A DNA stretch of 64,000 bases, taken from positions 1-64,000 of the IMG/VR virus record IMGVR_UViG_3300024239_000015; one strand, written 5' to 3'. How positions within the stretch are numbered: the stretch's first letter is position 1; every line of letters begins with the position of its first letter. The translations under genes were made by a program, and so were the position numbers. Below the pieces are notes generated by a model. The model worked only from the letters and a program-made list of their open reading frames with translations. It did no database searches and was not told the origin of the DNA. Of this stretch, positions 4,407-41,906 are shown piece after piece.

Positions 4407-7000
4407 TTCTGTTTCCTCGCTTCTTGACGTTTACGCGTCGTAAAACGACGACCACTACATTCCATCACGTGATTCACAAACAAGTAACTCCGACCGTTCC
4501 CACGTTTGACTACGTGTTTGTCCCACACGGCTTGGATGTCCATCGGGTTGTCAGCCGTCAGTAGTTTATACGCAATCGCTTTTTGTGCTGCAGGAGAGTT
4601 TTGCATCTCCAAGAAGTCCGCTGTGGCTTGAGGTCCAATCTTTGCAACCAGCAAACGGATTTCTGCTTCACCCAGTATCCGTGTCGGGTTTTCACGCCAC
4701 GGTTTACTGTTACGATCGTTCTGCGTGAGTTTCGCTAAGATCCCATAGTGCTGACGTTTGAAGCTGCTGCCCGCTGCAGCGTCATCGCCAATCTTCTCTA
4801 ACAACATCACGTACATACTACCAATCAACACAGGGTCTTTCGTCGTGTACTCTTTCCCAGCGTAATCCTTATACGTCACAGGACCGATAGGAATAGGAAA
4901 CGACTCTCTGAGCTGTTGGATTTGTGGAGCACCAATGTTAGGACTGTGGGGTGGGAGCAACAACCTCACCACAGGCTGGCTGACCGCAAACTCCGGATGG
5001 CGATGTTGGTGAATCTGCTCATTTAACTCTTTGAGCTTTTCAGCTGGACTGAGTTTGAAGCTTAAGTACTCCTCATATTGCAACGGAGAAGCAACCGAGT
5101 AATACGCCATCAAATACCGCCACGCATCGTCCACACGTCCTCGATCCATAAACTTGATCAAGTTCTGTCGCACCCACCAACTGGTTGCGTTGACGTAATG
5201 TTCGTAAATAATACCCGGATTCATTCGTTTGGTGACCGAGTCGCCACAGAAAACCAGATGTGCTCTACGTCCCCATTGGTCTATAGGCATATCTTCCCAT
5301 TTTCTGATATCTACCAATACCCCTTTCTTTTTGTCCAGTTATGTCGCTACCATAACCCGGTGTGCTAAGACACCCGCCCTTACTTTCATAAGGGAACAGA
5401 CTATATCAATCCCACAGCGGTACGGTTTATGTACCCTGGTTGGGCCTCTCGTTTGGGGCGGCCAATCGCTTGCCGCTCTACAGGGTGGTCCAGTCCCTTA
5501 GTCGTTGAACACATCCCATACCTGTAAATAGGGTTAGGGACTTCGATGCGGATTGCCCCGACGTTACTACAGTAACGCTCTATGTCTCTTTTACCATACC
5601 TGAGTAGTTAGTTCAGCCACCGTGGAGTGATGTAAACATCACTCGATCACTGTTTCCAGCACGGCTTGGTGTACATAGTTTCTAGGGTGTTCCCGTCAGT
5701 TAGATGAGTGGCATCTAAGAATTACTTCCTAGACGAACAAAGCCTTACCGCTCATTGAGCCATAAGTTCCGTTACCAAGTAAGCCTACAGCTTTTGAACC
5801 TACATTCGGTGTGTACTTGTAGGTGTATTTGATCTTTACCCACCAATCATCCAGAGGTGCAGCACGATACGTTCTCGTTACGATCGCTTTGGCATTCTTT
5901 GGATTATTCGGTAGGGCTTCTAGTGCAAGGAAACGTTCCAGTTCAGGTGTGGTTTGCACCCGTTCCGGTTGGTACTTTCCATTTCCTATACGCCGTACGT
6001 AATCTCGATACGTTTGGATGACCTCACTGTAAAACTCATCCTGCGCAGTTTGATACCGCTGTGGTTGAGTTTCCATCCCCACTGGCGTCGGTGGGGTTTG
6101 GTTTGTAAAGTCATGGAGTACTTCGATGTCAGTGACGATCGCACCACCTTTAGCGTACACGCGTTTATCGAACTTGTAGTCGATTTCCCGTAACGCTTTA
6201 AGCGACATTTGACATGGTCCTAAGAGTTCATCGTAAGGTCGCATGACAAACAGTAACCCATCGTCTCTTATTTTCTCCCCTACGTCTGGATACGGTTTGT
6301 AATTCTCATCGTCCCCATAAAGGTTTAACAAGAAGAACTTTTTACCATAACTACAGACAGCCTCTCCAAACGCCGTAGCGCGATTGGCTTTACACCACGT
6401 ATCGGAGGCAACGATACCGTCCTCGATGATCTCTGGGATCGTCATGAACGCAATATCGGTTTCTACCCCGTACATATACTCCCCATCGTCAGTGACGTTG
6501 GGAGAGTCTGCAAACACGTATCCTTTAGGGATAATGTCCCCTGGTTTAAATTTGTTAAAGCTGTTCTGTAACTGATCCGCTCTGTATTTAAACCCGAAGG
6601 TTTGGTGCGCACAGTGGTGTGTACGTAAAAGCACCATCCCTAAGGAATGGATTCCATTTTGTAGTTTCTCCATCTCCTCGTAGATCAGGATCGTCGTGGG
6701 GTTACTGCGAAATGGAAAGCCTCCTAGTTTCTTTGGAAACTTATGGATTACTTTTAACAACCGTCCGGTGGTAGGCATCGTTTGTTTAAAAGTAGTTTGT
6801 GCGTATTCAAACTCGTGTCCTGCGATCAAGTTAGGTCGCGTAGGACAATCCACCACTAAACTTTGTGCCTGATGACCTCCCCGCATGGATAAACGCGGGG
6901 AAGACGCACAGGCGATATAGTTTACTAAATCGGTGGTGTTCCCGAGCAATTGGGGATGCAGCTCGTTTTTAGACCTGTGTACCAAGGGTCTCAAAATCAT
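4400..7000 (-). CDS. Non-virion RNA polymerase beta-like subunit, C-terminal part (phiKZ gp71-73-like), two exons: about 7000-5771 and 5326-4400
   Basis: Exon 1 ends GSKAVGLLG(N); exon 2 starts KGVLVDIRKWEDMPID, rebuilding the beta motif GDK.AGRHGNKGV..I...EDMP; KRMNPG, GSMYVMLLEK and GEAEIR follow. Confidence 0.9.
5327..5773 (-). mobile_element. Group I intron without ORF in nvRNAP beta-C
   Basis: R element GTTCAACGAC (5501-5510), S element GATATAGTC (5399-5407), P3 GCCACTC/GAGAGGC, P2 with GTAA loop, P9 CCCTTAT-GAAA-GTAAGGG; 5' boundary uncertain (5770 or 5773). Confidence 0.88.
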
Positions 7001-16540: not shown

Positions 16541-16804
16541 TTATACCTCCAGGTTTTTAAATTGCGCCAGTTGGTGGTCTGGGTCATACCGTTCTATAGG
16601 CAACTCAAACCGTTTTGCTGACGCTTCATCTCGATACAGCCAGTTAGCTATCGTAGCAATAGTTGCACTGTGTAGTGCAATTACACGACTGACTTTACGA
16701 GGCGTACCGTGGTCTAATACCCCTTTGTGAGGCGCTAGTTTCCTAAGCGCTTCAAATTGCTCCCTGTCTAATGCGACAAGGGCATTTAATGCATCACCGT
16801 CAAA
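16541..16804 (-). CDS. beta'-N exon 3 (87 aa, not in the ORF track)
   Basis: TTT GAC GGT GAT GCA = FDGDA... open to TAA at 16541; preceded by the intron terminal G at 16805. Confidence 0.9.
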   Translation of the reverse strand, partial: FDGDALNALVALDREQFEALRKLAPHKGVLDHGTPRKVSRVIALHSATIATIANWLYRDEASAKRFELPIERYDPDHQLAQFKNLEV

Positions 16805-19800
16805 CCATGTATGTTCGGAGAGTTCGCAAGGCTCTCCCGCGTCTCACGCTTCACAGCGTGGGTACGCAGCTGTAGGCTTTCCCTACAGTGCAGACTATAC
16901 CATCTACTCTCCTTTATAGAAGAGCAGCACCACATTTCGAAGTACCTTGAGTTTTCACTCTAGCTTGTACCCCTACTCCCCGCTACGGGACAGTCGTTGA
17001 ACACACTCCGTAATCTGTGTAAACAAACCCTTAGGAGCTTCGCTGCTGATTGACCATTTTACCTTTCGGTTTCTTTTTCATCCCCTTAGCGCCGTTTCCG
17101 GTTTCTTTTCAGCATAGGGCATCTCTACGATTGTTTCTGGGTTTCCCCACCTGACGTTCAGAAGACTCGCGCCGTCCTAGTGATCTCCGTGTACCGCACT
17201 TGCTGCCAAGTACTGTAGTTTACTGTTTCCAGCACGGTGTTGGTTGCAGAGCTTTAGGCTTTTCCAGCGTTTAGTGGTGTACGCATCCACCCTCGCGGAT
17301 AGATGGGACTTTAACATACTAACTAACGTTAACGTATTCGATTTGATATATTGACCATCTACCCCCGTTGATGGACATTCCCCTTTGTACCGTATTTCTT
17401 CGAGCTCCCACTTCCGCACAAAAGTCCAGAGTCGACGCGTAGTGCTTAACTTCGCCGGTCAACTTATTGGTTACTTTTATCGGAAAGGCCGGACGTCGCG
17501 AGTTAGGTGACATTTTCTTAGGCTTTCTCTTAACGACAGTTCCCACAGAACCTTCCTTCTCGTCAAGATGTTTTGCTAGGAATAAACCCCTGACTCTAGT
17601 CCCCCTATTTATCGACTGCCATATCGAACTCGTAGACACATTGAAGTATCTGGCAGCTTCCCCGTAGCTCTCGAAGATATAAACTTCTTTTCCATCCTTA
17701 GAAGTCAATACAACTTCGCGCGGGGCACCATTTGGTTTCTCGCCGACATTACTGGAATCGATTTGTTTCCAACTCGAGTCCGCGTAACGCACGTTGTATT
17801 TTTTCAAGAACGGAGTTTGCTGTGTGGAGTTCAGATAAACGTGTAACCTACTCTGGGACGCTTTCAGCCACGCGGCTGCTTTGTTTAAACCCAAGAACGA
17901 ATTAACTTCCTGCGTGGTTAAGTCTAAGACCTCTACAGGACGATTATCTTTCTTCAGCCCTAACTCGTAAGCGTGCCATAAGTTTCTTTTCCTATCGACC
18001 CATTCTAGGTTACTGGCTCTGTTGTTAAATTTATCGCCATCGATGTGATTCGTGACGTAGTGGTCGTGTTCTTTGTGATGGAACGTTTCGGCGACAAGAC
18101 GATGGTGTGTCATCGTGCCTTTACCGCGTATGTTCATCACGTTATACCCGAAATGTGAGTTGAAGTACGCTAAGGGACAATAATCTAACAAAACATCAAT
18201 TACTATCCCTTCTTCGGAAATCACAATCCGAGGAATCTGGGGGTGGTGGTAATACTTAGGGTATCTTTTCGATTCTATCAAACCTTCGCGCATCTTTCAT
18301 TTCCTTCTCATGCTAGTCGCATAAGATAGATGCATGTTAAGTTAATTAATGTTATTTCATCGCAGTTCATGCCGGTTATACAGTGAGTGGATACACTGAC
18401 TGAGTTTATAGCCGGGTCTTTCTTTATCCTGCTGATAAAGAATTGCTGCATGGATAGTTCATGCAGTGTGGGCTTTGCTTTCACGTAGGGCGCGACACCT
18501 ACGCAGTTCTTAAAAGAACGTCCCCAGAATTACCTGGGATAAAAGACTATATCTTCATCCGTTATAAGTAGGGATAACGGAGCTCCTCGTTTCGCATAGT
18601 TTTAAACTACTTAGCGCTAGGCTAACCACCTGACCTTTCGATCGCTTGCGGGCTACTCTACTCCCTTCTCTTTCTTATTGCAAGAAAGCGGTTTCGATAG
18701 TCGTTGAACACATTCCGTAATGTATACTGCTGATACACCCTTAGGAACTTCGCTGCTGATAGACCCAGACTCTTTGTTTTCAAACCGTCACGTAGACCGT
18801 TTCCAGTTGCGTTGTGGTAAAGAGTTTTAGATAGATCGTCCCAGCAGTTAGAGGAGTTTGGCGTTACTGTTACCAGTAAAGGAAACCTAAGTCAATTTCG
18901 ATGGAAAATACACGGGATACCACGGATCTCTCGATGTTCGTGGGGTTGTGTACCGATGGGGTTATAAACACCAACGACGTAAGGGGAGTCGCTGATTAAC
19001 TCATCAAAGAGTGCATCCAGCTCTGGGTTGTAAGTGTGAGCGTTTTCAGACAGGAATTTCTCAATCTGATTCGGACCCCACCCACGTTTCAAAAGCTTAT
19101 TGGTGAGCTGTGCTTGCAATACAGCAATCGCAGTCGTCCACGGAATCTCCAGCTCTGAGTATAAGTGCCATCCTGTCAAGGAGTTCACGACGTTACGGAA
19201 GCTGTAGTTTGCACGTGTACCGAAGATGTGTTTACGGAACCATCCCTTCTTCCCACCTAGAATGTTCTTGTACAGGTTGTTGTAGTACGCACTGAGTTGT
19301 ACCACACACACCGTTGCACGACTCTCTGCTTTCTTTAACCGTACGTTCTGGTACGCTTCCCCTAAGTCGAGAATGGTGTAGGCTGCATCAATCGCGTCTA
19401 CCATTCCGAAGTCGGCGTAGGTACCCACCGCTGTTTTCTCTGTAATAAACGCAATCTTGTTTGGGATTGGTAGATATGGAGTAAACACCAAGTCACGGTT
19501 CTCACGCACCAGCTCCATGACGTTGTCTTTGCGATCGGGTGAGCCTGAGTACAATCGGTTATCCACGAGGATACTTAAGTACAGGTCAAAGTGATCAAAG
19601 AAGTTATTCAACCCCCGTTGAAACCCATACGCTTCCAGTTGTTCTCCAAACGCACTATGACCACTCGGGATACGGTAGTAGGGGTCACATAACCACCGCA
19701 TGATACTGATCCCGTTCTTCTTAAACAGTTGGTCTAAGATGTACCAGATTGTTGGGTTAATCAACGCTTTCACGCCCCGTGGTGCGCGTATCCATAACGT

Positions 19801-20206: not shown

Positions 20207-22003
20207 TTACCAGCGAGACTGGAAGCTTTGACCGTTGTTAAACGTCGGTGCGTTGTAGCCAGTGCTGAATGCATTTGCAGACAGACCGCCAGACAACACG
20301 TCTACGTTTGCACGAGGTACGACGCGAGTTTCGTTTTGTGTGTACTCTGGAGTCAGAGCCGCACCTACTTCACCCAACGCAGTCACCAGGGCTAACAGAA
20401 CGCGATCGTTTAACATCACTTCAGTAGCGTAGTCAGTGATCACCACGTCACCTAAGTATTTCTTCTGCAGCTGACACAGTACAGTCAGACGTTCTTCGGT
20501 AGAGGCACGACGTGGATCGTAACACTCATCGAAACGGTAGACTTGGGTTAAGTCTTTGTCACCTTCCATAGCAGAGATTGCCATGTGGTCGAAGTCACGG
20601 ATGTCGGACTTCACAGAGTGGCCATTGGTGTAGTAACCTAACGGAACCCGTGTAGGGACGACTTTACCGATAGGACCAGAACCTAAGCGCTGGAACACTT
20701 CAGAGAACTTACCAGAGGTCAGGTTATCACACGCTTGTGTGAAACGCTTCACTGCCGTGTCAGAACCCGCACAGGCGTCACGTAACAGACTCAGTAACCA
20801 GGTGTCTTCACCTGTTTCTGGGATGTGTACTACGACCGCTACTTCTGGGTGAACGAATTCAGCGAAGAAGCGGTTTACGTCGAACGTAGGTTCGTTAGCA
20901 CCCACACGAGTACCTGCTGGCAGTAAACCTTCAGCGGCCATTTCAGCAGACAGCACGTCTAAGCTACGCTCAGCGCCATGGCGGTGGAACGTGTTGATGT
21001 ACTGACGGCTACGGATTGGTTCAGCAGCTAACGCTAATGCCAACACCATGTGCTCAGGCGTGGTCACACCGGCGTTCAGTGACAGATCGGTGACAACCAT
21101 ACGCGCTTGGAAGTGCTGAGTAGTAGCACGAGCTGGCTGGTATGGCGTTTCGATCATGCGTGGGCCTACGTAGACTAAGTCTAAGAAGGCAGACAGCTGA
21201 GCCATGTTACGAGATTGACCCGCTAACAAACCACCATTGGTGTTGGTGTTCACCAACGCAACAGAAGCAGTGATGTCACGACGTACGGGTAAACCACCTG
21301 CTGTTTTAGCAGGAGCTGACGCTAACTCTACACGGCTACGTAATTGGAAGCCTGCTTGGTTTGCACCTTTCATAGAAACGATGTACTGACCTGCTTCCTG
21401 TAACGCTGCTTTTAAGTTGTACTGTAAAGCAGACATTGCACGGACTAACACGTCGCGTACGGCTTTGGCATCGCCTGGAGCAGTTTCACGGGGTACTACA
21501 CTGAAGCCTACGAATGACGCCGTTGGCGGTAAACCTGCTAACGCTTTAGACACCAGTGGTTGGAACTGAGGATCACGTGTTAAGTCACCTACGGTTTGTG
21601 GGTACAGTAACTCACGTTGACCTAAGTTGATGCTGTCGTTGCGTTTGGCTAACATCGGCAGTTCTTCTGCAGTACCTGCTAATAACATCAGGTACACCGC
21701 AACTTGCTTTTTGTACTCACCCACGATCGCTACAGCTGACACTGGGATCAGAGTCGTTTGTTGATCCAGTTCCAGCATGGTGAACTTGAAGTTGTCACGG
21801 TTGGCAGAGTCTACCATTGGCTTCAGAGTTTCTAAGTAGCCAGACAGCACTTGACTGTGTGGGCTTAACGGCATCACACCGCTGGTTTGTGCTGCAAACA
21901 TAGCAGCTAAGTTTTGAGCGACTGGTTGTTCACCAGTGAACGTTTGTTGTTGTTCTGCTTGTGCCTGAGTCGACTTCTGGCTGGCAGTGTTCAGTTCTTT
22001 CAT
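20207..22003 (-). CDS. chmA: Chimallin, major nuclear shell protein (phiKZ gp54-like)
   Basis: 598 aa directly upstream of beta'-N; Q-rich flexible N-terminus; RVPLGYY..DIRDFDHMAI-type motifs; strong high-expression codon bias. Confidence 0.82.
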   Translation of the reverse strand: MKELNTASQKSTQAQAEQQQTFTGEQPVAQNLAAMFAAQTSGVMPLSPHSQVLSGYLETLKPMVDSANRDNFKFTMLELDQQTTLIPVSAVAIVGEYKKQVAVYLMLLAGTAEELPMLAKRNDSINLGQRELLYPQTVGDLTRDPQFQPLVSKALAGLPPTASFVGFSVVPRETAPGDAKAVRDVLVRAMSALQYNLKAALQEAGQYIVSMKGANQAGFQLRSRVELASAPAKTAGGLPVRRDITASVALVNTNTNGGLLAGQSRNMAQLSAFLDLVYVGPRMIETPYQPARATTQHFQARMVVTDLSLNAGVTTPEHMVLALALAAEPIRSRQYINTFHRHGAERSLDVLSAEMAAEGLLPAGTRVGANEPTFDVNRFFAEFVHPEVAVVVHIPETGEDTWLLSLLRDACAGSDTAVKRFTQACDNLTSGKFSEVFQRLGSGPIGKVVPTRVPLGYYTNGHSVKSDIRDFDHMAISAMEGDKDLTQVYRFDECYDPRRASTEERLTVLCQLQKKYLGDVVITDYATEVMLNDRVLLALVTALGEVGAALTPEYTQNETRVVPRANVDVLSGGLSANAFSTGYNAPTFNNGQSFQSRW

Positions 22004-22074
22004 GTATTTCTTCCTTTTGTTTTACGTACATTTCGATTGCAATCGAGCTAGGTTTTATCCTAGTGCTCAACTCT

Positions 22075-22087
22075 ATAATCTATATCT
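22075..22087 (-). promoter_or_regulatory. Putative early promoter motif upstream of chmA
   Basis: ctcaactctataatctatatctgtaaa is nearly identical to 53097-53123. Confidence 0.6.
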
Positions 22088-22221
22088 GTAAATTTTTCGA
22101 GTCGTCTACGGATATAGGAATTTGGGGGTTTAGCCGCATAGAGAGTGGCTGTGCAGGCACTTTTTACAAAGCCTGCTGTGTTTTCTACATAGTATAACTA
22201 CAGCAGTAAAAATAAACACTG

Positions 22222-24692: not shown

Positions 24693-24706
24693 GTAAACTC
24701 ACCAAA

Positions 24707-24739
24707 CATACGAGGGAGGCGTAAAGCCTCCCTCTATGC
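24707..24739. terminator. Convergent-junction hairpin flanked by CATA/TATGC
   Basis: cata-c-gagggaggc-gtaaa-gcctccctc-tatgc. Confidence 0.65.
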
Positions 24740-24744
24740 TGCTC

Positions 24745-27054
24745 CTACTCTTCGCTGTTCCAAACCACCATCGGAGTCATGTCACGTGACTCCCAACCTT
24801 CTATTACAGGAGGTGTGCCGTCTACCCCCCACGAAGGAGGGAAGTAGTCTGATACCATTTTCGTTAGATGTTTCTCGTGGGTGTAATACCCCAAGGACTC
24901 TAAGATCAAATAGTAACTGGTCATTAACCCATAGATCAATTTCCGGTAGTTCATCATCTCCAGTAACTCTTCTGGGATTCCGTGGACTTCAGCATAACTG
25001 ATGGGTAGGTAGATAGTCGTTAAATACTTTTTGTTGTATTTACGCATCCACTGACGGAATCGTTCGGCTAAGTCTTGGTCGGGCAGGGAATCCAACCACG
25101 TGTTGACTTTGTTCGGTGTATTAGTCAACATCGACATCTTAATCGCACGGTACGGAGGTTCGGTGATGACTCCGTATTTCGGTGCAAAGACCTCCTGCCA
25201 TAACGTGTAGTTCAAATACGGAGAGTTTTCGTTTTTGTACCCCTTCGCAGGTTTGATGGTTGCTGTGGAGAAAAACAACGAATCGCCGTTTCCAATCCCG
25301 TGTTTAATACGGTGTTCTTCGTCTGCGACTTGCTGCAGTATTGCGCGCAGCTCTATTTTCTTCCCACTGGAAATCGTCGTCAGTATCGTTTCAATGAGTT
25401 CATCCGACTTGTCCATTAAGTACGTAGGGGCTTTGGAGTTCCGTAACGTCGCTCCTTTGATCTCCAGTTCGTGTTTCTTAAAGACAATCCCTTCTTTTAC
25501 GGCTTGGCTTGCAAAGTAGTGTTTTGCCATACTGGTTAAAAAGAACACAGGGAAACTGTATTCATTTTTCATTGCCAGCATGTGGATTTTCTCTGTCACC
25601 ACACCCATGTTCGCTGACATCAACGCCAGTAGGTGTACGGTCAACTGAGAACACAAATAAGTGACCGCAGCACTCACGTTTGCGCTACGTTCACCAAACT
25701 CCAACTCCCCGACATACCACTCTGTCCAGTACTGGGTAGAGAAGATACTGGAGTCAGTATCTGACGCCACCACACACCTACGTATCGATTCAGGAAAGTG
25801 AGCCATACTCGCTGGCATGTTGGGTGTACGCCAAAACGCACGGATGAAGTCTGCGTAGTCCTGTACGGTTTCGTACAACTGCTTCGCTAACGCACCAATC
25901 CAACCGTAATGTGGTCCGTTCACAACGTCATCGTCCTTGAGTTTTTTCCCGTCGAGCTCGCGGTGTGCGATGATCACTAGCAGGATCTGAGCGTCTTCGT
26001 CTAACTTTTTAATCCACCCAGCCGTTTCTTCCGCTGGGATGTGTTGTGTAGGTTTCTCAGATAAACCACCAAGTAGACGTCGTACAAACTCAGGATGTAA
26101 CTCCGCTAAGCTGTACATACACCCCGTATAGACATACGCGGCTCTTTCGATGTCCGATAACGCTTCTACCAACAACCGCAGCTTCTCTTCGAGTTCTGGA
26201 CTTCTCCAGTACAACCGCGTGGAACGTAACACGTGTTCAAACGTGTACTCTACACTTGGATACCCAAGTTTATATTTTTGCATCGCAGCGCGTATAGCGT
26301 CGTAGTCGGAGTGGTTGACAATACTGACGATATTCTGCTGTGCGATTTCATAGCTCCAGTAGTGACGGTTTCCTAACAGAAAACGCTCTACGTTCGCGTT
26401 TGTATTGGAAGACGCGCTACGACACGTACTGGTGAGTGTACTGTGAGCTGAGACCAAACACAATACAGACGACTTCGTACCATGCGCACCTGAGACTGAG
26501 TTACACTTGATCTTGTTTCGGTTCTGTCGGTTGTTGTAGATGTTCTGCATCAGTGTGTTCCCCGCACGTTTCGCGTCAAACATCAACCCTTTGTTTTTGT
26601 TTCGGTTAGCAAGCTCGCCTACTAAGTAACGTCCGGTTAGAGACTCTTTGACTTTTGGGTTCGCGTACACCGTTAAGTTAGGAGCAATCGCAGACCCTAA
26701 ACGTACTGCTTTTTTGAGAATCTCTGTTAAAGGGACTAATTTCTGTTCACGATCCCCGTCAACCTCACGTTCCAGTATCTTTACCTTCGGGTCTACAAAA
26801 GGAAACTTTCCTGTATTCCCAGGTTTGGTGTTCGCTACTACCCATTTTAAAACTTCTTCGAAGGGTTTCCCTGTACGCAAGCTGATGTACTTCGCAACGT
26901 CACGTGCGTACGTTTTATAAAAATCTAACGAGCGCTTATACTCTTCAGGCGCTAGAACAAATGGATTGGACATCGTAAACGTCTCTTGTAATTTCAGTGC
27001 ACTAAACGATAGACCGTAAAGGTCAAAAAAGACAGACGGCATAAAAGGAAGCAT
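24745..27054 (-). CDS. Family B DNA polymerase, polymerase domain (phiKZ gp50-like)
   Basis: KIKCNSVSG (KxxxNS.YG-like) and VASDTDSS (DTDS) motifs; likely true start MSNPFV at 26973. Confidence 0.9.
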   Translation of the reverse strand: MLPFMPSVFFDLYGLSFSALKLQETFTMSNPFVLAPEEYKRSLDFYKTYARDVAKYISLRTGKPFEEVLKWVVANTKPGNTGKFPFVDPKVKILEREVDGDREQKLVPLTEILKKAVRLGSAIAPNLTVYANPKVKESLTGRYLVGELANRNKNKGLMFDAKRAGNTLMQNIYNNRQNRNKIKCNSVSGAHGTKSSVLCLVSAHSTLTSTCRSASSNTNANVERFLLGNRHYWSYEIAQQNIVSIVNHSDYDAIRAAMQKYKLGYPSVEYTFEHVLRSTRLYWRSPELEEKLRLLVEALSDIERAAYVYTGCMYSLAELHPEFVRRLLGGLSEKPTQHIPAEETAGWIKKLDEDAQILLVIIAHRELDGKKLKDDDVVNGPHYGWIGALAKQLYETVQDYADFIRAFWRTPNMPASMAHFPESIRRCVVASDTDSSIFSTQYWTEWYVGELEFGERSANVSAAVTYLCSQLTVHLLALMSANMGVVTEKIHMLAMKNEYSFPVFFLTSMAKHYFASQAVKEGIVFKKHELEIKGATLRNSKAPTYLMDKSDELIETILTTISSGKKIELRAILQQVADEEHRIKHGIGNGDSLFFSTATIKPAKGYKNENSPYLNYTLWQEVFAPKYGVITEPPYRAIKMSMLTNTPNKVNTWLDSLPDQDLAERFRQWMRKYNKKYLTTIYLPISYAEVHGIPEELLEMMNYRKLIYGLMTSYYLILESLGYYTHEKHLTKMVSDYFPPSWGVDGTPPVIEGWESRDMTPMVVWNSEE

Positions 27055-27069
27055 CCGCTTCCCTAGTCT

Positions 27070-27100
27070 AAAAAAAAGAGGGGGTCAGCAAACCCCCTTT
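27070..27100 (-). terminator. Intrinsic terminator
   Basis: Stem agggggt/accccct, followed by T8 on the minus strand. Confidence 0.7.
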
Positions 27101-27219
27101 GTCTCTAAGGCATTGGGGAAAGCCAAAGACGAGGTTCAGGTACATGTCGTATTCCACCGCCGAAAGGACACCCAGCGTGGTCTACATACCATAGTCGTCA
27201 ATGTCAAAAAAAAAACGTG

Positions 27220-27248
27220 AAAAAAGAGAGGAGCGTATAGCTCCTCTC
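27220..27248 (-). terminator. Intrinsic terminator
   Basis: gagaggagc-gtata-gctcctctc, followed by T6 on the minus strand. Confidence 0.75.
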
Positions 27249-27417
27249 GTGGTGGTTTATCAAACCCAATTTTCATGAAGGAAGAATTGCGTAAAACTAA
27301 ACAACGAGCTGTAGACTCCCCAGGAGGCGAGGATGACCTCCGAAGTGGAACCGGTTTAGAGACTACACGAAAAGTACGGACTCTAAAACTTCTCACCTCA
27401 GAGGTAACTACATAGTA

Positions 27418-27843
27418 TTACGACTGTATTTTAAAAGACGTAATGGTAAACCCATTACTCTGTAACGCTTCTTCTACCAATGGACGTTTCAGTGGATCGA
27501 CGCCATCGAGTTCAATCACAAACTTTGTTGTCGTGTGGACTTCGATACTCGATTCCACCAGCCACGGTAAGCCAATGAATCGTGTACTGCCATCCATCGT
27601 TTTGATCTTCAACCACTCGTAGTCATACGGACTGTTTGGTTTTGGATCTGGTAAGAAAGGTAGGATGTTCGCATGCAGTGCAGCAACGTCCGTTCCTGCC
27701 TGTGCGGCTGTTTCGGTATCGGCAATCGACAATGCTTTTGCTCGAATAATCGGTGGGATTACACTCGGCGCGCACGTCGTCGCTGAGATGGTATTACGCA
27801 GTTGGAAATAGTCTTGCCAAGCCATACAGGGCTCCTCTTTCAA
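27418..27843 (-). CDS. Conserved hypothetical protein upstream of DNA polymerase (gp49-like position)
   Basis: 141-aa ORF; DYEWLKIKTMDGSTRFIGLPWL beta-rich core. Confidence 0.7.
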   Translation of the reverse strand: MKEEPCMAWQDYFQLRNTISATTCAPSVIPPIIRAKALSIADTETAAQAGTDVAALHANILPFLPDPKPNSPYDYEWLKIKTMDGSTRFIGLPWLVESSIEVHTTTKFVIELDGVDPLKRPLVEEALQSNGFTITSFKIQS

Positions 27844-31538: not shown

Positions 31539-31583
31539 TGAGACCTCTTCTATTTATTACGAAAGATGGTTAATGTCATTGAA

Positions 31584-31596
31584 ATAATATATATCT
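31584..31596 (-). promoter_or_regulatory. Putative early promoter motif upstream of the paralog array
   Basis: ataatatatatct equals AGATATATATTAT on the minus strand. Confidence 0.55.
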
Positions 31597-31651
31597 CAAC
31601 GACGTTCCACATGTGATATGCGTTTATCGTAAATATAAACGCTTTAGAGCG

Positions 31652-31681
31652 GCATACTAGGGTAGGTCTACCCTACCCTAG
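31652..31681 (-). terminator. Hairpin after phuZ, followed by TATGC
   Basis: ctagggtagg..cctaccctag, then TATGC on the minus strand. Confidence 0.6.
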
Positions 31682-31689
31682 CTGGTCGA

Positions 31690-32709
31690 CTACAAAATCA
31701 AACCTGAGCCCGTAGAATCGCTCTCACCACCTAAGGCGGACGTCTCTGGCAGACTGGCTTGTTGTTGTTGGATGGCAGTTAAACGCTCTTTAGCGATGGA
31801 GTACAGTTTCTCCACACCTACAGTCGTGATCACTAACTGTAGTTGTTTCAGGTCGTCGTCGTTTCCTGCTGGAGCTAATAACCCATCGCAGATGTACCCA
31901 GCAGCGACCGGTGGGTAGTAGTCTGGGTTACTGGACAAACTGAATAAACTGATTGGGAACTCCACGTCTTTGAGTTCGTCGTCGTTTAGACAGTAGTCAA
32001 TTAAAGCCAGTTGAGGTTTGACCTGAGTCACACGGTTGTAGAACACCCAGTTGATCACGTCCGAACTATCTACACGAGAGTTCTCACCAGAGACCGCACG
32101 AGAAATATACGACACTAAACGTCGTGCTTCTGAGTCGGCTTCTGTTGCAGTATAACCATCATTCAGTGGATCAGTCAGCACATAGAACATCGACATCGGT
32201 ACGTTACGTCCCCGTGCCATTTTGTCTAACGACTCGATGACCTTGACGTTGTTCTGTGCGCTCAGCGCAGATTCTGCTGAACCGATAAAGATCGCCACCA
32301 CAGGGATACCTAACTCTAACAAACGAGCCTGCAGTAACGATGCAGCGACGTTTCCACTTCCGCCTGTCGTAGAGGCCAGTACGATATTAAAATCGCCCGG
32401 TGCGTGTTTCTGAAGGATTTGTGGGATGTGCTTCTCAATATCAGAAGCCAACTGACCACGGACTTTACCTGCACCATCTTTCTTATCACCCAGTGGAACG
32501 ATATACACCGACTCCGTAGGAATAGCGTCGGTTAAGTTCGCTTTGGAGGTGTCGATATACGCGATTTCTAATTCCGCGTGTCCTGGGACTTGCTGCTCTA
32601 CCGCACTTTGAAAGTACGCTGCGTTGTTGATCCCCGCGCCACCACAGCCATAAATACGTAATGTTTTCTTCATTCTAGTTTCCTTCTTCAGTGTAAACCT
32701 ATGAGCCAA
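31690..32709 (-). CDS. phuZ: Phage tubulin PhuZ
   Basis: GCGGAGIN, IDTS, DGAGKVR, TTGGSG and DSSDVIN tubulin/FtsZ motifs; likely start MKKTLRIYG. Confidence 0.93.
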   Translation of the reverse strand: MAHRFTLKKETRMKKTLRIYGCGGAGINNAAYFQSAVEQQVPGHAELEIAYIDTSKANLTDAIPTESVYIVPLGDKKDGAGKVRGQLASDIEKHIPQILQKHAPGDFNIVLASTTGGSGNVAASLLQARLLELGIPVVAIFIGSAESALSAQNNVKVIESLDKMARGRNVPMSMFYVLTDPLNDGYTATEADSEARRLVSYISRAVSGENSRVDSSDVINWVFYNRVTQVKPQLALIDYCLNDDELKDVEFPISLFSLSSNPDYYPPVAAGYICDGLLAPAGNDDDLKQLQLVITTVGVEKLYSIAKERLTAIQQQQASLPETSALGGESDSTGSGLIL

Positions 32710-33639: not shown

Positions 33640-33644
33640 GACAA

Positions 33645-33677
33645 CATAAAGAGGGAGGCTCGAGCCTCCCTCTATGC
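33645..33677. terminator. Convergent-junction hairpin flanked by CATA/TATGC
   Basis: cataaa-gagggaggc-tcga-gcctccctc-tatgc. Confidence 0.65.
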
Positions 33678-33681
33678 TGGT

Positions 33682-37670: not shown

Positions 37671-38966
37671 ATGTCGGCTCAATTAAAAGAACTATTCGAT
37701 CGTGTATGCAGTCACTTGAAATACGATCGTCGGATGGCTGGGTCTTTACAGCACACCGTACAAGCGTTTAAAACAAAGAACGAAGATCACTTGATGTTTT
37801 TTGGGACAGGTCTTTTAGGCGTGTACCCAGTCAAGTTCACTGGGGAAGACCGAGACTGGTTGTTTGATGAAGTCTTTCGGATTGACGAGTACGCACTGCG
37901 ACAAGACTTATTGAAACTCAAAAGCCCTAAAGATCCCTCAGAGCCGTTGATTCCCGAAGAGTACAATGTTCTGTCTGATCCACTGAACCACTTGCTGCTG
38001 TATACCGTGTATCGGTTTAAAGACTCCGACTTAAGTCAAAGCGTCTCCTTACAAGCCCAGCAAGACTGTGTGCGTTTATTGCACTACAAGTTTAGCTCTT
38101 CGTTACTCTCAGAGTACTTCCACTACCCAGCTGACCCTGCGGTTGCTAAAGTCGCTTTTGAAAACTTTGACTCTGTAGTAGCGCGTTTACTGAAAGACCA
38201 TCCCACGGAACTTTCAGAAGAGTCGTTGAGTCAACGGTTTGACATCAAACGCTTAGGGACGTGGTCGGCGCTCTTTGACTCCAGAGCAGAGCACTTTGTC
38301 TCTCGTGAAGGTTTACACGTACAAACCTTACTGAAGTACGGACCAGACGAAGCGTGTTTGTATATGGTATCAGACATGCAGACACGGATACGCAACGTAA
38401 TCAAAGACTACACCAAAGTCTTCTACGACGTCCGTAGCTCCAATAGTCGTGTGGTCACGACAAGCTCTGTGATTGAGTCTTCAGAAGGGACGTTTATCCG
38501 TGACGTCTCACGTGTGTACCATGACTTGATGCGTTACTTACAACAGGTAGCATTAGAGCCAAAGAACTTTGTACGACAAGAGCTGATCGACGTGGTGGCA
38601 GTAGCAATTCCTTCTATAGACAAAAAAGTCTTTGAAGCAGCGCTTTACTACCTAAGTGAAAACCTCACGAATCCAAAGAAAGCGTACCTACAAGAACTCC
38701 TAACAGAAACCTTACTCTACACCATCGAGTTTATGGCTTCACGGAGAATCAAAACGTCCGACTTAGCGTTTTTGATTGAACGACTCAAAGCCATGTACAT
38801 GGGTTCACGTATCAACGACAAGAATGTCATGCACTTACGGAAGCTTGGGGATCGTTTAGTCCAAGACTTGAAACTCAGGAAGTCGACCGTCCCTACCGCC
38901 CCAGAGCGGAGTGGCGTGATGCTCTACATTGCACTCAGAGCCCTCACGAAACACTACTTTAAGTAA
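37671..38966 (+). CDS. Conserved virion head-associated protein (phiKZ gp32-like)
   Basis: 431 aa; NEDHLMFFGTGLLGV motif; AGGAG RBS; preceded by TATGTAG. Confidence 0.6.
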   Translation: MSAQLKELFDRVCSHLKYDRRMAGSLQHTVQAFKTKNEDHLMFFGTGLLGVYPVKFTGEDRDWLFDEVFRIDEYALRQDLLKLKSPKDPSEPLIPEEYNVLSDPLNHLLLYTVYRFKDSDLSQSVSLQAQQDCVRLLHYKFSSSLLSEYFHYPADPAVAKVAFENFDSVVARLLKDHPTELSEESLSQRFDIKRLGTWSALFDSRAEHFVSREGLHVQTLLKYGPDEACLYMVSDMQTRIRNVIKDYTKVFYDVRSSNSRVVTTSSVIESSEGTFIRDVSRVYHDLMRYLQQVALEPKNFVRQELIDVVAVAIPSIDKKVFEAALYYLSENLTNPKKAYLQELLTETLLYTIEFMASRRIKTSDLAFLIERLKAMYMGSRINDKNVMHLRKLGDRLVQDLKLRKSTVPTAPERSGVMLYIALRALTKHYFK

Positions 38967-38970
38967 ACCA

Positions 38971-39004
38971 GCATAGAGGGAGGCGCTTGCCTCCCTCTTT
39001 ATGC
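38971..39004. terminator. Convergent-junction hairpin flanked by GCATA/TATGC
   Basis: gcata-gagggaggc-gctt-gcctccctc-tttatgc. Confidence 0.65.
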
Positions 39005-39737: not shown

Positions 39738-41906
39738 TTAGTGGACGTACACCCCTTGGTAATACCCAGGAGCGGTTGTGCGTTGGAAAGGATTCCGATA
39801 CAGCGAATCTTTCTGTTGACGTTCGCGATCTTTCAGCTCACGGTCTAACCCGGCCATGGTTTTCACCTCTCCTCCATTGGCGGTCAATTGCTGCCGCACT
39901 TGGTTCAAACGATGTGTTGTGAGGATTTTCTGGTGTGGGTCTTTAGCTTGTTTCAACGTCTCTGTGAGTGTATCGAATTCATCCTGCAAAGTTTCAATCA
40001 ACGCTTGACGTTTACGTTGTTCGTCTTCAAAACGCACGTCTTCGTCAAACACTTTTGACATCACTCTCCTAGGATCGATTCCGTACTGTTCTAAATTACG
40101 TCCAAACATCAGTAACCACTGGCCTAGTAACCACGCAACAACTAAGTCATCATGTCCGCCGAGTTGGTGGTCAATCCTTCCATTACGCATTTCCAGCTTA
40201 CGAATCTGACCCGAGAGTTTCCGGTCTTTGATTTGTGTGGCTGTACGTTTGGCTGCGGTTTTCAGTACACGACCATAGAGGATCTCACGGCTTGCGCCTG
40301 TGGTGATGAAACCAAACATCTTCCGGTGTTCGTTCACAAGCTCTGCGTTGGCGGGACGTTTCATAATCAAAGCAAACAGGTCTTTGTGGTTATCCCGGTC
40401 ATCCACGACTTTGTTAAAGATTCTCTGGAATGGGCACATCCCTGCACTCAGTAACTCGAGGATCGCTAAGTCGATAAACGTCTGAGCTGAACTCTTCCGC
40501 TCAGGGATAAACGTCACGGTGGGGTACTTCACCAGAATGTTTGCTACAAACGTCGCTGCTGGAATCAGGTTCGATTTGTTGATGGTCGCAGAGGCTACTG
40601 GAGCGCCTGTTTCTACGTCGACAAGCACCAGAGCACAGTCATCGTTTCCGATGGCGTCTGACGTATCAAGCCCCAAGATAAACCGACCTTCCTGCATCCT
40701 GCGTTGTTTCTCCGACTCAGGGATATACCACTTGAGTACAAAGCGAGTCCGTTCGTCGATGTCGTACCACTCTGGATCAACTTCTGATTTTAAGATCTTC
40801 TCGAGGATGGCTGTAGGCAGTGGGTTTGATAAACCACCGGTTGTCCATCTATTAAAGTAGTCACGATCTGCGTCCTCACCAGTAGAAGCCGTCTCGATGA
40901 TCTTCCCGTACAGCCATTCATCCGTGTATCCCAACTGACGGTGATTCCATACACCAAGGATCATCAGCTTCTTACCGCGTGACGTCCCTTCAATCACCTG
41001 CACTAATTCCGTACGGTCTTTTAAGTCTAATAAACGCTCTGTCCAGTCAGCAGAGTTGTTCATAAACTCGTACATGTACTTCCCTTCAGGTGTGTCGAGT
41101 TTCCCTGCGGTGGTTGTAAAGATAGCACCATTGGGGTAGCCGTGTAAACGCGCTTCGTCGCGCACGGCGTTCATCGCAGTCATCGCTGCAGGTAGTGTCT
41201 TGTGGATGTACTTCGTAAACGGACCCTCGTCTCCATGCAGGTAGCCTACTGACGCACCCCGTCCTGTTTTGTTGGCGTCGTCTTCAGAGTTCTGTCCTAC
41301 CGCAGTTAAGTACCGGTTCTTGTTCGTGTTGTACGTCAGCATCGTCTGGTTGTTGGCGTCATTCGGATCTTTCACCACCAACCACTCCGGTAAGTACGAG
41401 CGCATCTTCTGTAACCGGTTCACGTTCTCTACACGGATCGTGTTGTCTTTGGTGATCAGTAAGGATCTCGAGTTACGTAACCAGAATAAATACATCCCTT
41501 GGGACAAGCAGTCAGTAGAGACCGATTTACCCGTCTGACGAGGTTGCACTAAGAAATAGTCGATGTTGTTGAAGAACGTCCAGAATAAAGAAATGTTCGC
41601 ACGGTTCGCTTTAAACGGAATCGGGTCATCTGACGCGTTCGGTGGTATCCTTACGACTTCACGTAAGTAGTACCACGGGTTCCATCTGACCTCCATCTGG
41701 ATGTCAAGTTTGATCTCACGAGACAGGTGTTCAGAATAAACATTCACCCCAGACAGGTGAGGTTGGTGTAACGCTAAACAGAAGTCACTGTTTTTGACAC
41801 CCATCAGTACGAGTAAACGAGCGTACTCTAAAAAGCTTTTGTTATTCGTTTTATAGTCGCGAATAGCGGTTGGGTATTTGTCCCAATCTTCGGCATAAAG
41901 TATCAT
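39738..41906 (-). CDS. terL: Terminase large subunit
   Basis: Walker A PRQTGKS, Walker B LHGDEG, TTTAG coupling motif, nuclease LGLDTSD..GNDD and HDDLVVA. Confidence 0.93.
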   Translation of the reverse strand: MILYAEDWDKYPTAIRDYKTNNKSFLEYARLLVLMGVKNSDFCLALHQPHLSGVNVYSEHLSREIKLDIQMEVRWNPWYYLREVVRIPPNASDDPIPFKANRANISLFWTFFNNIDYFLVQPRQTGKSVSTDCLSQGMYLFWLRNSRSLLITKDNTIRVENVNRLQKMRSYLPEWLVVKDPNDANNQTMLTYNTNKNRYLTAVGQNSEDDANKTGRGASVGYLHGDEGPFTKYIHKTLPAAMTAMNAVRDEARLHGYPNGAIFTTTAGKLDTPEGKYMYEFMNNSADWTERLLDLKDRTELVQVIEGTSRGKKLMILGVWNHRQLGYTDEWLYGKIIETASTGEDADRDYFNRWTTGGLSNPLPTAILEKILKSEVDPEWYDIDERTRFVLKWYIPESEKQRRMQEGRFILGLDTSDAIGNDDCALVLVDVETGAPVASATINKSNLIPAATFVANILVKYPTVTFIPERKSSAQTFIDLAILELLSAGMCPFQRIFNKVVDDRDNHKDLFALIMKRPANAELVNEHRKMFGFITTGASREILYGRVLKTAAKRTATQIKDRKLSGQIRKLEMRNGRIDHQLGGHDDLVVAWLLGQWLLMFGRNLEQYGIDPRRVMSKVFDEDVRFEDEQRKRQALIETLQDEFDTLTETLKQAKDPHQKILTTHRLNQVRQQLTANGGEVKTMAGLDRELKDRERQQKDSLYRNPFQRTTAPGYYQGVYVH

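What the first reader, a model, noticed from the sequence alone, without database searches (positions are those of the whole stretch)
27220..27414. Candidate small RNA 1 upstream of DNA polymerase (about 190 nt)
Seen in sequence: on the minus strand, TATGTAG (27414) is followed by ~190 nt with internal stems (e.g. TTTAGAG..CTCTAAA) and closed by a strong hairpin plus T6. The only ORF (27136-27396) lacks an RBS, starts at GTG and runs through the terminator. Inference: a stand-alone non-coding transcript, part of a possible tandem sRNA locus at a core position.
Basis: inference. Interest (0 to 1): 0.6.

Follow-up and report, generated by a model that had tools for sequence, protein, structure and literature searches.

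The report
Structured small RNA before jumbo-phage polymerase
Between the DNA polymerase gene and its partner gene, an uncultivated nucleus-forming jumbo phage carries a conserved promoter-like motif, about 190 bases of strongly folded non-coding sequence and a terminator; this looks like a new example of the short non-coding RNAs already seen in phiKZ-type phages, but no RNA data exist to show it is made.

Summary
On the minus strand, TATGTAG (27414-27408) is followed by about 192 nt. These fold far better than shuffles (z -5.0) and end in a 9-bp GC hairpin plus T6.

The window belongs to a 233-kb chimallin-encoding jumbo phage from a subsurface metagenome. The element lies in a 444-nt gap between an SH3DP gene and the divergent family B DNA polymerase.

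Two distinct relatives (polymerase 69% and 66% identical) keep the same layout:
- an invariant 15-nt motif containing TATG, which marks phiKZ late promoters, with G as +1;
- about 200 nt folding at z -5.2 and -5.7;
- a 5' hairpin kept by compensatory changes;
- a hairpin terminator.

No ORF is conserved, and the 86-codon ORF is junk. There is no Rfam match, paralogue or conserved antiterminator.

My best reading is a stand-alone structured non-coding RNA of the "promoter then early terminator" kind described in phiKZ and 201phi2-1. A second, shorter unit and the polymerase's own promoter follow it.

Expression could not be tested, because only DNA runs exist. Function is unknown. I rate it a new member of a known kind, of moderate interest.

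The parts
27418..27825 (-). Upstream gene: SH3DP protein (SH3-fold domain associated with phage DNA polymerases), 135 aa
   Evidence: Pfam PF20287, E 3e-22; PHROG 3235. It occupies the same position in relatives L005, L006 and L007-L010.
27425..27435 (-). T/A-rich element ending in TAC (TTTTAAAATAC), 15 nt upstream of the predicted +1, inside the end of the SH3DP coding sequence
   Evidence: Read from the sequence. Comparable T-rich ...TAC elements precede the other ATACTATGTAG sites. The link to the phiKZ middle-promoter motif AAanTTACc centred at about -24 (PMC4666361) is by analogy only.
27407..27421 (-). Promoter-like motif P1, GTAATACTATGTAGT; contains the SH3DP stop codon (27420-27418) and TATG (27414-27411); predicted +1 is G27411
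   Evidence: Invariant in all three distinct relatives, while the rest of the gap averages 68-69% column identity. ATACTATGTAG occurs twice in the window against 0.01 expected. It occurs three times in the genome, always outside the long ORFs; one copy lies in front of chimallin. In phiKZ late promoters TATG carries the +1 at G (PMC4666361, PMC7598289).
27220..27411 (-). Candidate small RNA 1, about 192 nt from the predicted +1 to the end of the T6 run
   Evidence: z -4.97. Homologous units of 210 nt (L005) and 208 nt (L006) fold at z -5.20 and -5.68. No conserved ORF. No Rfam family.
27336..27405 (-). 5' domain: long irregular hairpin, with outer 12-bp helix 27405-27394 / 27347-27336 and inner helix 27389-27381 / 27361-27354
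   Evidence: MFE and centroid structures. The outer helix is kept in L005 and L006 with different sequence. On the model-based alignment, 8 of 19 pairs change on both sides against 3.9 +/- 1.3 in shuffles (0 of 500 reach it), and 82.5% of cells are paired against 33-46% when partners are slid.
27206..27248 (-). Terminator T1: stem-loop 27248-27226, T6 27225-27220, CACG, T10 27215-27206
   Evidence: Terminator scan; inverted repeat I4, 9 nt, 100% complementary; hairpin alone -17.1 kcal/mol. A hairpin plus T-run sits at the same place in L005 and L006. There the hairpin is directly followed by TATGC or TTTATGCGT, the phiKZ-type terminator layout (PMC10914365).
27136..27396 (-). 86-codon GTG ORF, judged not to be a gene
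   Evidence: Arg/Ser/Phe-rich translation that runs through T1, T10 and P2. No SD. No Pfam or PHROG hit. Codon score -0.066, below the 5th percentile (0.098) of in-frame pieces of real genes. Not conserved: the longest sense ORF in L006 is 29 aa. No similarity to the 95-aa ORF at this position in L010.
27182..27215 (-). Promoter-like module P2: T-run, GACATTGACG, CTATGG, TATGTAG (27188-27182); predicted +1 is G27185
   Evidence: Read from the sequence. Its upstream part is a direct repeat of the module in front of the polymerase (families D1 and D3). Related ATACTGT(G/A) motifs sit at the same place in L005 and L006.
27068..27185 (-). Second short unit (candidate small RNA 2, about 115 nt), ending in terminator T2 (stem-loop 27098-27079, T8 27077-27070)
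   Evidence: Terminator scan. Its fold is only weakly better than shuffles (z -1.68). A hairpin plus T-run is conserved in position in L005 and L006.
27032..27062 (-). Hairpin (27062-27047) followed by TTTTATGCCGTCTGT: phiKZ-type terminator / late-promoter motif
   Evidence: Nearly invariant in the window, L005 and L006. The same layout lies upstream of the polymerase in L007-L010 and in phiKZ. It matches the published phiKZ terminator motif ending ...YTTATKYYGT (PMC10914365) and contains TATG.
26999..27030 (-). Promoter-like module P3 in front of the polymerase (TTTTTTGACC ... TTTAGTG)
   Evidence: Direct repeat of the P2 module. It corresponds to TTTGAC ... TAATACTTTAGT in L005 and L006. A T-run ending in TAC is present in most of the relatives (L007, L009, L010) and in phiKZ.
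24745..26973 (-). Divergent family B DNA polymerase, 742 aa (start at ATG 26973, not 27054)
   Evidence: Pfam PF20286, E 3e-230; PHROG 2927. Homologues are 717-731 aa long and the conserved non-coding motifs lie upstream of 26973.

Best explanation
This is a self-contained short transcription unit of a chimallin-encoding, phiKZ-like jumbo phage.

Proposed mechanism:
1. A phage RNA polymerase starts at the G of the TATG inside the conserved motif GTAATACTATGTAGT (predicted +1 at 27411).
2. It transcribes about 190 nt that fold into a long 5' hairpin plus smaller hairpins.
3. It stops at a strong hairpin plus U-run (27248-27220).
4. The product is a highly structured non-coding RNA that does not need the downstream gene.
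5. A second, shorter unit of the same design follows, and then the polymerase's own promoter.

Shown here: the motif, the fold, the terminator, the absence of a gene, and conservation of all of these in two distinct relatives, with compensatory changes in the 5' hairpin.

Inferred: that the motif is a promoter, by analogy with phiKZ TATG promoters and because the same motif stands in front of chimallin. Also inferred: that the RNA accumulates.

The RNA's target is unknown. I favour a protein-binding or otherwise trans-acting role rather than a riboswitch-type leader, because no alternative antiterminator pairing exists. T1 probably also ends the upstream operon's transcripts and shields the polymerase gene from read-through.
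For: Phage type:
- Chimallin, PhuZ-like tubulin, divergent DNA polymerase and SH3DP are present.
- The record is 233 kb with terminal repeats.
- Syntenic relatives carry chimallin, tubulin and an RNAP Rpb1 piece.

Promoter:
- The 15-nt motif is invariant across relatives whose polymerase is only 66-69% identical.
- ATACTATGTAG is about 200-fold over chance in the window.
- All three genomic copies lie outside the long ORFs and face ORF-free stretches of at least 189 nt.
- The same TATGTA(G/C) motif plus a 5' hairpin precedes chimallin in all three phages.
- 6 of the 12 TATGTAG heptamers lie outside the long ORFs, which cover 93% of the genome.
- In phiKZ late promoters the +1 is the G of TATG (PMC4666361).

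RNA-level selection:
- z is -4.97, -5.20 and -5.68 for the three homologues.
- Unit length is kept at 192, 210 and 208 nt.
- The 5' helix is kept with changes on both sides in 8 of 19 pairs (0 of 500 shuffles reach this; slid controls give 0-2 pairs).

Non-coding.

Constitutive terminator:
- Hairpins are -17 to -21 kcal/mol.
- The best competing pairing is only -8 to -12 kcal/mol and sits at different places in the three sequences.
- Blocking the terminator costs 11-17 kcal/mol.

Precedent:
- phiKZ has 17 short 5'UTR-derived ncRNA candidates and 201phi2-1 has 11, all defined by a terminator soon after a start site; some are confirmed by northern blot (PMC10914365, PMC11512511).
- phiKZ also has a roughly 180-nt structured 5'UTR RNA (PMC8545117).
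Against: - No expression data exist. The only runs holding this phage are four DNA runs from one subsurface-metagenome study, and they show no variants in the gap.
- There are only three distinct homologues, so the covariation test is weak and the sequences are related.
- Folding does not identify the strand. The reverse complement folds about as well in L005 and L006 (z -5.26 and -5.57) and less well in the window (z -2.68).
- More distant relatives lack the unit. L007 and L009 have gaps of only 105-122 nt, and L008 and L010 carry a small ORF instead. The element is therefore not core to the family.
- There is no strong terminator between the SH3DP stop codon and P1, so the same RNA body could be made as a 3'UTR.
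- The promoter assignment rests on analogy with a different phage genus.
Confidence: 0.55

Rival explanations
1. It is a cis-acting untranslated region rather than a free RNA. The structured 190 nt would be the 3'UTR and terminator of the SH3DP operon, or the first part of a long multi-terminator leader of the DNA polymerase mRNA. Phage factors (antitermination, or a switch between virion and non-virion RNA polymerase) would decide when read-through reaches the polymerase gene.
For: - No strong terminator separates the SH3DP stop codon from the unit; only a weak 7-bp hairpin lies inside the gene end.
- Three terminators and three promoter-like modules are stacked before a replication gene.
- The phiKZ literature describes the same short RNAs as products of conditional premature termination, with full-length read-through forms also seen (PMC10914365).
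- Antitermination has been proposed for 201phi2-1 (PMC11512511).
Against: - P3, directly before the polymerase, makes a long leader unnecessary.
- There is no conserved alternative (antiterminator) pairing.
- Other hairpin terminators in this genome lie within a few tens of nucleotides of the nearest long ORF. A conserved, covarying 190-nt body is therefore more than a terminator needs.
- There is no significant pairing between the RNA and the polymerase translation start.
Confidence: 0.28
2. It is neutral or purely DNA-level spacer: promoters and terminators duplicated during evolution of the gap, or a DNA element such as a replication origin or protein-binding palindrome. The fold would then be a by-product.
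For: - P2 and P3 modules are direct repeats.
- The reverse complement folds about as well in two of the three phages.
- The unit is absent from more distant relatives.
Against: - Compensatory changes keep the 5' helix while its sequence diverges.
- G-U pairs occur in that helix in the sense orientation.
- All three homologues fold at z about -5.
- Cumulative GC skew shows no turning point here.
Confidence: 0.1
3. It encodes a small protein: the 86-codon GTG ORF or a shorter one.
For: - An 86-codon ORF exists.
- L005 has a 113-codon GTG ORF on the same strand.
- L010 and L008 carry a real-looking small gene of about 95 aa at this position.
Against: - There is no SD.
- The ORF crosses two T-runs, a terminator and a promoter motif.
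- Its codon score is below the 5th percentile of genuine coding pieces.
- It has no family hit.
- The ORF is broken in L006, where the longest is 29 aa.
- It has no similarity to the L010 protein (E 0.76).
Confidence: 0.03

Closest known systems
phiKZ short 5'UTR-derived / intergenic ncRNA candidates (e.g. the 71-nt RNA before PHIKZ221, the 141-nt RNA before PHIKZ302, the roughly 180-nt 5'UTR RNA of p40) - PMC10914365, PMC8545117
   Same: - Host is the same kind of phage: nucleus-forming, with its own multisubunit RNA polymerases.
- The design is the same: a phage promoter, a structured body under 250 nt, and a hairpin terminator before the next gene.
- There is no SD-preceded ORF.
- Function is unknown.
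   Different: - There is no sequence or covariance-model similarity to the phiKZ gp49-gp50 gap.
- This RNA has not been observed.
- Here two units sit in tandem and the downstream gene has its own promoter module, so the RNA is intergenic rather than strictly 5'UTR-derived.
201phi2-1 sRNA005, conserved upstream of the tail protein gene in 201phi2-1, phiKZ, EL and PA3 - PMC11512511
   Same: It is a positionally conserved short structured RNA upstream of a core gene in related jumbo phages. It was recognised by a terminator soon after a start site and by a conserved predicted fold.
   Different: - The neighbouring gene differs (tail protein against DNA polymerase).
- The sequences are unrelated.
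- That RNA was seen in ONT-cappable-seq reads.
- Its conservation spans several genera, whereas this one is confined to three known genomes.
phiKZ late promoter (TATG, +1 at G), middle promoter (AAanTTACc near -24) and the phiKZ terminator motif (hairpin followed by TTATKYYGT) - PMC4666361, PMC7598289, PMC10914365
   Same: - TATG lies at the predicted start.
- A T/A-rich ...TAC element lies 15-21 nt upstream.
- In this genome, dozens of GC hairpins are followed directly by CTATGC.
- A hairpin plus TTTTATGCCGT lies in front of the polymerase.
   Different: - The conserved motif here is longer (ATACTATGTAG) and rare (3 exact copies).
- Its temporal class is unknown.
- Recognition by this phage's polymerases is untested.
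PAK_P3 short RNA upstream of the DNA primase/helicase gene - PMC10914365
   Same: It is a short terminated RNA placed just before a replication gene and conserved among close relatives.
   Different: It comes from an unrelated phage group that depends on the host RNA polymerase, and there is no sequence relation.

Membership tests
Short terminated ncRNAs of phiKZ-like phages (operational class of PMC10914365 / PMC11512511) | A phage transcription start site at the 5' end | tested here: inconclusive
   Only a motif match is available. TATG lies inside a 15-nt invariant block, and the same motif precedes chimallin. No 5'-end data exist.
Short terminated ncRNAs of phiKZ-like phages (operational class of PMC10914365 / PMC11512511) | A terminator less than 250 nt downstream of the start and before the next gene | tested here: met
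   The hairpin plus T6 ends 192 nt after the predicted +1. The same arrangement holds in L005 (210 nt) and L006 (208 nt).
Short terminated ncRNAs of phiKZ-like phages (operational class of PMC10914365 / PMC11512511) | [quoted passage not shown] | tested here: met
   The only SD-like case is a 14-codon TTG ORF with GGGAG 11 nt upstream. It is not conserved in L005 or L006.
Short terminated ncRNAs of phiKZ-like phages (operational class of PMC10914365 / PMC11512511) | An abundant short RNA species seen in RNA-seq or northern blot | not testable with these tools
   No RNA run holds the phage.
Any Rfam family (release 15) | A score at or above the family's gathering threshold | tested here: not met
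   There is no hit in the gap at gathering thresholds. The best E-value hits are 12-19 bits against thresholds of 40-80, and they differ among the three homologues. There is no tRNA or tmRNA.
Riboswitch / attenuator leader | A conserved alternative pairing that competes with the terminator | tested here: not met
   The best competitor is -8 to -12 kcal/mol against -17 to -21 for the terminator, and it lies at non-homologous positions.
Base-pairing sRNA acting on the neighbouring gene | Significant, conserved complementarity to the polymerase translation start | tested here: not met
   Duplex energies are no better than for shuffled targets: 91%, 7% and 30% of shuffles do as well. Genome-wide top hits are stem-to-stem or CCUCC-to-SD pairings that are not conserved in L005 or L006.
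Small protein gene | An RBS, coding-type codon usage, and an ORF conserved in relatives | tested here: not met
Intrinsic terminator | A GC-rich stem-loop followed by a U-run | tested here: met
   9 bp with 6 GC, a 5-nt loop and T6; -17.1 kcal/mol. Whether the phage polymerases stop there is untested.

The most novel reading that the evidence does not exclude
The RNA is an early-made, structure-conserved RNA dedicated to replication in nucleus-forming phages. It would bind or regulate the DNA polymerase/SH3DP pair whose genes flank it, or it would serve as a transcript that primes or marks a replication start, as promoter-driven origins do in T4. It would then be more than one more anonymous short RNA.
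Probability: 0.1. Interest if true: 0.7.

Novelty: new member of a known kind. Interest (0 to 1): 0.42.

Why it matters
Short terminated RNAs have been catalogued in phiKZ and 201phi2-1, but none has a known function, and very few have comparative support. This locus offers a candidate with a conserved start motif, a covarying 5' hairpin and a fixed place between two replication genes. It could serve as a test case for what such RNAs do in nucleus-forming phages.

It also gives a first view of promoter and terminator signals in an uncultivated member of the group. The TATG-based starts and the hairpin-plus-TATG terminators appear to extend well beyond Pseudomonas phages.

Tried and rejected
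- **Rfam and tRNA:** Rfam at gathering and at permissive thresholds on the window and on both homologous gaps gave nothing consistent. ARAGORN found no tRNA or tmRNA.
- **Phage DNA search:** blastn of the gap against 50,697 phage records gave no match.
- **More homologues:**
  - The IMG/VR protein-based scan gave only an identical contig and a 40% relative.
  - IMG/VR pattern scans gave only the identical contig, or unrelated hits.
  - The metagenome pattern scan gave the source contig and one unrelated AT-rich hit, L027.
  - Cluster members gave L023, identical to L005 in the unit, and two contigs without the gap.
- **Covariance model:** a model of the 5' domain found only its three training sequences. 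It was run against the own genome, the distant relatives, the phiKZ region and all other loci.
- **Expression:** only four DNA runs from one study hold the phage. Laying their contigs showed no variants in the gap.
- **Coding potential:** rejected.
- **Pairing with the polymerase start region:** not better than shuffled targets.
- **Genome-wide target scan:** only trivial stem or anti-SD pairings, not conserved.
- **Antiterminator search:** none conserved.
- **Replication-origin idea:** cumulative GC skew follows gene orientation and has no turning point near 27 kb.
- **Strand call from folding energy:** not decisive.
- **Sigma-70 promoter scan:** no site in the gap, as expected for a phage that uses its own polymerases.
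- **Published coordinates:** supplementary tables of the phiKZ and 201phi2-1 transcriptome papers are not held, so I could not look up whether a start or stop site is mapped in the phiKZ gp49-gp50 gap.

Full report
**What the window is.** The window is the first 64 kb of a 233,377-bp virus record with direct terminal repeats. Near the finding it encodes a chimallin-family protein (20207-22003), a PhuZ-like tubulin (31690-32709), a divergent family B DNA polymerase (24745-26973) and, just upstream of the polymerase, an SH3DP protein (27418-27825). All are on the minus strand. The polymerase is about 40% identical to those of cultured jumbo phages of Xanthomonas, Erwinia and Ralstonia. This is therefore an uncultivated nucleus-forming, phiKZ-like jumbo phage. 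The only runs that hold it are DNA runs of a subsurface metagenome.

**The observation.**
- The SH3DP stop codon (27420-27418) is followed at once by TATGTAG (27414-27408).
- About 190 nt with internal stems come next.
- A 9-bp GC-rich hairpin (27248-27226) with T6 follows, then CACG and T10.
- The stretch folds at -66.3 kcal/mol against -46.5 +/- 4.0 for shuffles (z -4.97).
- The TTTAGAG/CTCTAAA stem is the inner part of a roughly 70-nt 5' hairpin whose outer 12-bp helix pairs 27405-27394 with 27347-27336.
- A second TATGTAG (27188) starts a shorter unit that ends in a hairpin plus T8 (27098-27070). This unit folds only slightly better than shuffles (z -1.68).
- Then come a hairpin followed by TTTTATGCCGTCTGT (27062-27032), a T-run/GAC module, and the polymerase start at 26973.

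**It is not a gene.**
- The 86-codon GTG ORF translates to an Arg/Ser/Phe-rich string and crosses T1, the T10 run and the second promoter motif.
- It has no SD and no Pfam or PHROG hit.
- Its codon score lies below the 5th percentile of genuine in-frame pieces.
- The closest relatives do not keep it: L006 has no sense ORF longer than 29 codons.
- More distant relatives (L008, L010) do carry a small gene of about 95 aa in this gap, but it is unrelated to the window's ORF.

**Relatives.** A protein search with the polymerase found two near relatives on long contigs, at 69% and 66% identity. The rest of the family is at 52% or less. Their loci (L005, with L023 identical in the unit, and L006) are syntenic: tubulin, about ten small genes, SH3DP, a gap of 424-442 nt, polymerase, a reverse gene, chimallin, and an RNA polymerase piece. 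Aligning the gaps shows three things.
- First, GTAATACTATGTAGT is invariant and overlaps the SH3DP stop codon in all three. The rest of the gap averages 68-69% column identity.
- Second, each phage has about 200 nt after it, ending in a hairpin and a T-run. In L005 and L006 the hairpin is followed directly by TATGC or TTTATGCGT.
- Third, the hairpin plus TTTTATGCCG block before the polymerase is almost invariant.

**Evidence for selection on RNA structure.**
- The three homologous units are 192, 210 and 208 nt long. All fold far better than shuffles (z -4.97, -5.20, -5.68).
- The outer helix of the 5' hairpin sits at the same place in each but has a different sequence. In L005 and L006 it is a perfect 10-bp helix, and the two differ at four consecutive pairs, each compensated. 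The window has a 12-bp helix with two G-U pairs.
- I built a covariance model of this domain and counted pairs on the model-based alignment. Of the cells, 82.5% pair, against 33-46% when partners are slid by 1-3 columns. Eight of 19 pairs change on both sides, against 3.9 +/- 1.3 in shuffles, and none of 500 shuffles reaches that number.
- With three related sequences this is suggestive, not conclusive. In that alignment the window's helix is also partly out of register, which lowers the count.
- Folding does not tell the strand. The reverse complement folds about as well in L005 and L006, and worse in the window. The strand assignment rests on the orientation of the motif, of the T-runs and of all neighbouring genes.

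**Is TATGTAG a start signal?**
- In phiKZ, late promoters are defined by TATG with the G as +1. All four bases are required in vitro by the non-virion RNA polymerase. Middle promoters carry AAanTTACc near -24 and can also have TATG at the start (PMC4666361, PMC7598289).
- ATACTATGTAG occurs twice in the window against 0.01 expected and three times in the genome.
- All three copies lie outside the long ORFs, are preceded by a T/A-rich ...TAC element 15-21 nt before the G, and face at least 189 nt without a long ORF.
- One copy is the first signal in front of chimallin. There TATGTA(G/C), a following 5' hairpin and a downstream AAAAA(T)TTAC element are conserved in L005 and L006 too. In phiKZ the chimallin gene has an early and a middle promoter (PMC8244752).
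- Half of the 12 TATGTAG heptamers lie outside the long ORFs, which cover 93% of the genome.
- The upstream parts of P2 and P3 are direct repeats of each other. The three modules in the gap therefore look like one promoter type used three times, the last time for the polymerase itself.
- I conclude that P1 is very likely a phage promoter. Its temporal class and exact +1 are inferred.

**Terminators.**
- This genome is full of GC hairpins followed immediately by CTATGC. That is the layout of the conserved phiKZ terminator motif, a stem-loop followed by TTATKYYGT (PMC10914365).
- T1 of the window is instead a classical hairpin plus U-run.
- In all three phages the terminator hairpin is strong (-17 to -21 kcal/mol). 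No upstream segment competes with it at a conserved place (best -8 to -12 kcal/mol), and blocking it costs 11-17 kcal/mol.
- That argues against a riboswitch-type leader and for constitutive termination, unless a protein factor intervenes.

**What it most likely is.** The anatomy matches the class of short RNAs found by ONT-cappable-seq and Grad-seq in phiKZ (17 candidates, several confirmed by northern blot) and in 201phi2-1 (11 candidates, one positionally conserved across genera). In that class a start site is followed within 250 nt by a terminator, the body is structured, there is no SD-preceded ORF, and function is unknown (PMC10914365, PMC11512511, PMC8545117). I place the finding there as a new, sequence-unrelated member.
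- There is no Rfam family.
- There is no paralogue in the genome, and no model hit in more distant relatives or in the phiKZ gp49-gp50 gap.
- The unit is confined to a small subclade. Relatives with about 50% polymerase identity have either a gap of only 105-122 nt or a small gene at this place.
- The phiKZ gap itself has a hairpin plus TTTATG, a TTTTTAC element, and a second hairpin with a T-rich tail about 110 nt further on. That might be a miniature counterpart, but I could not check published start and stop sites.

**Function.** I found no support for antisense action on the polymerase start region. A genome-wide scan gave no conserved target, and GC skew gave no hint of an origin. A free, protein-binding or otherwise trans-acting RNA is my preferred reading (0.55). 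A cis role, as a 3'UTR or as an insulating, factor-controlled leader, is the main rival (0.28). The two are not exclusive: T1 almost certainly also ends upstream transcripts.

**Limits.** There are no RNA data and only three distinct homologues. The promoter was assigned by analogy, and the population in the source samples is clonal, with no variants in the gap.

**Verdict.** It is a new member of a known kind, of moderate interest.

Noticed in passing
window 5377-5767 (-): Rfam group I intron (RF00028), 53.8 bits, above the gathering score. I did not examine which gene it interrupts.
   Followed up: no
window 16541-18891 (-): An HNH_3 + NUMOD1 endonuclease ORF (17319-18293) is flanked by two long ORF-free stretches (16541-17318 and 18294-18891). 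It sits next to the ORF that follows chimallin. This looks like a homing-endonuclease or intron insertion, as at phiKZ gp55-gp56. Rfam did not call an intron there.
   Followed up: no
whole genome G000, e.g. window 24700-24740, 33640-33680, 38940-38980: Dozens of GC-rich hairpins (GAGGGAGG...CCTCCCT) lying outside the long ORFs are followed immediately by CTATGC(T/G)G; some are bidirectional. This is the same layout as the phiKZ terminator motif, and it overlaps the late-promoter TATG.
   Followed up: partly
G000 129587-130043 (-) = L004 1087-1543: A third ATACTATGTAG is followed by about 450 nt with no ORF longer than about 48 codons and a chain of at least six perfect or near-perfect hairpins. 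The stretch ends in a hairpin plus CTATGC before the next gene. It is another, larger non-coding RNA candidate.
   Followed up: partly
window 22004-22221 (-): The region upstream of chimallin carries the same TATGTAG motif, a conserved 5' hairpin, a TATGCGG motif and an AAAAATTTAC element. All are conserved in L005 and L006, which suggests stacked promoters of different classes, as reported for phiKZ gp54.
   Followed up: partly
Its 5' hairpin covaries between L005 and L006 around a conserved CGCTAA loop, but the window's copy folds only weakly better than shuffles (z -1.68).
   Followed up: partly
window 27220-27273: In run X3 a low-depth contig (depth about 6) matches only the terminator T1 segment, with 4 differences, and then continues into unlike sequence. 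The main contigs of that run break at the same place. A related phage or a variant junction may exist in that sample.
   Followed up: no
L011 12378-12578 (phiKZ 40377-40577): The phiKZ gp49-gp50 gap has a hairpin plus TTTATG, then TTTTTAC, then AATGTAAG, then a GGGTACCC hairpin with a T-rich tail, and then the polymerase. It is a possible short counterpart of the unit studied here.
   Followed up: partly
window 31539-31689 (-): A 151-nt ORF-free gap lies downstream of the PhuZ-like tubulin gene. A similar gap of about 150-160 nt follows the tubulin gene in L005 and L006.
   Followed up: no
L008 2358-3000 and L010 2392-3000: Relatives with about 50% polymerase identity carry a small gene in the SH3DP-polymerase gap: a called 95-aa ORF in L010 and an uncalled counterpart in L008. 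It is followed by its own long hairpins and a terminator. This gap therefore seems to be a hotspot for inserted short units.
   Followed up: partly
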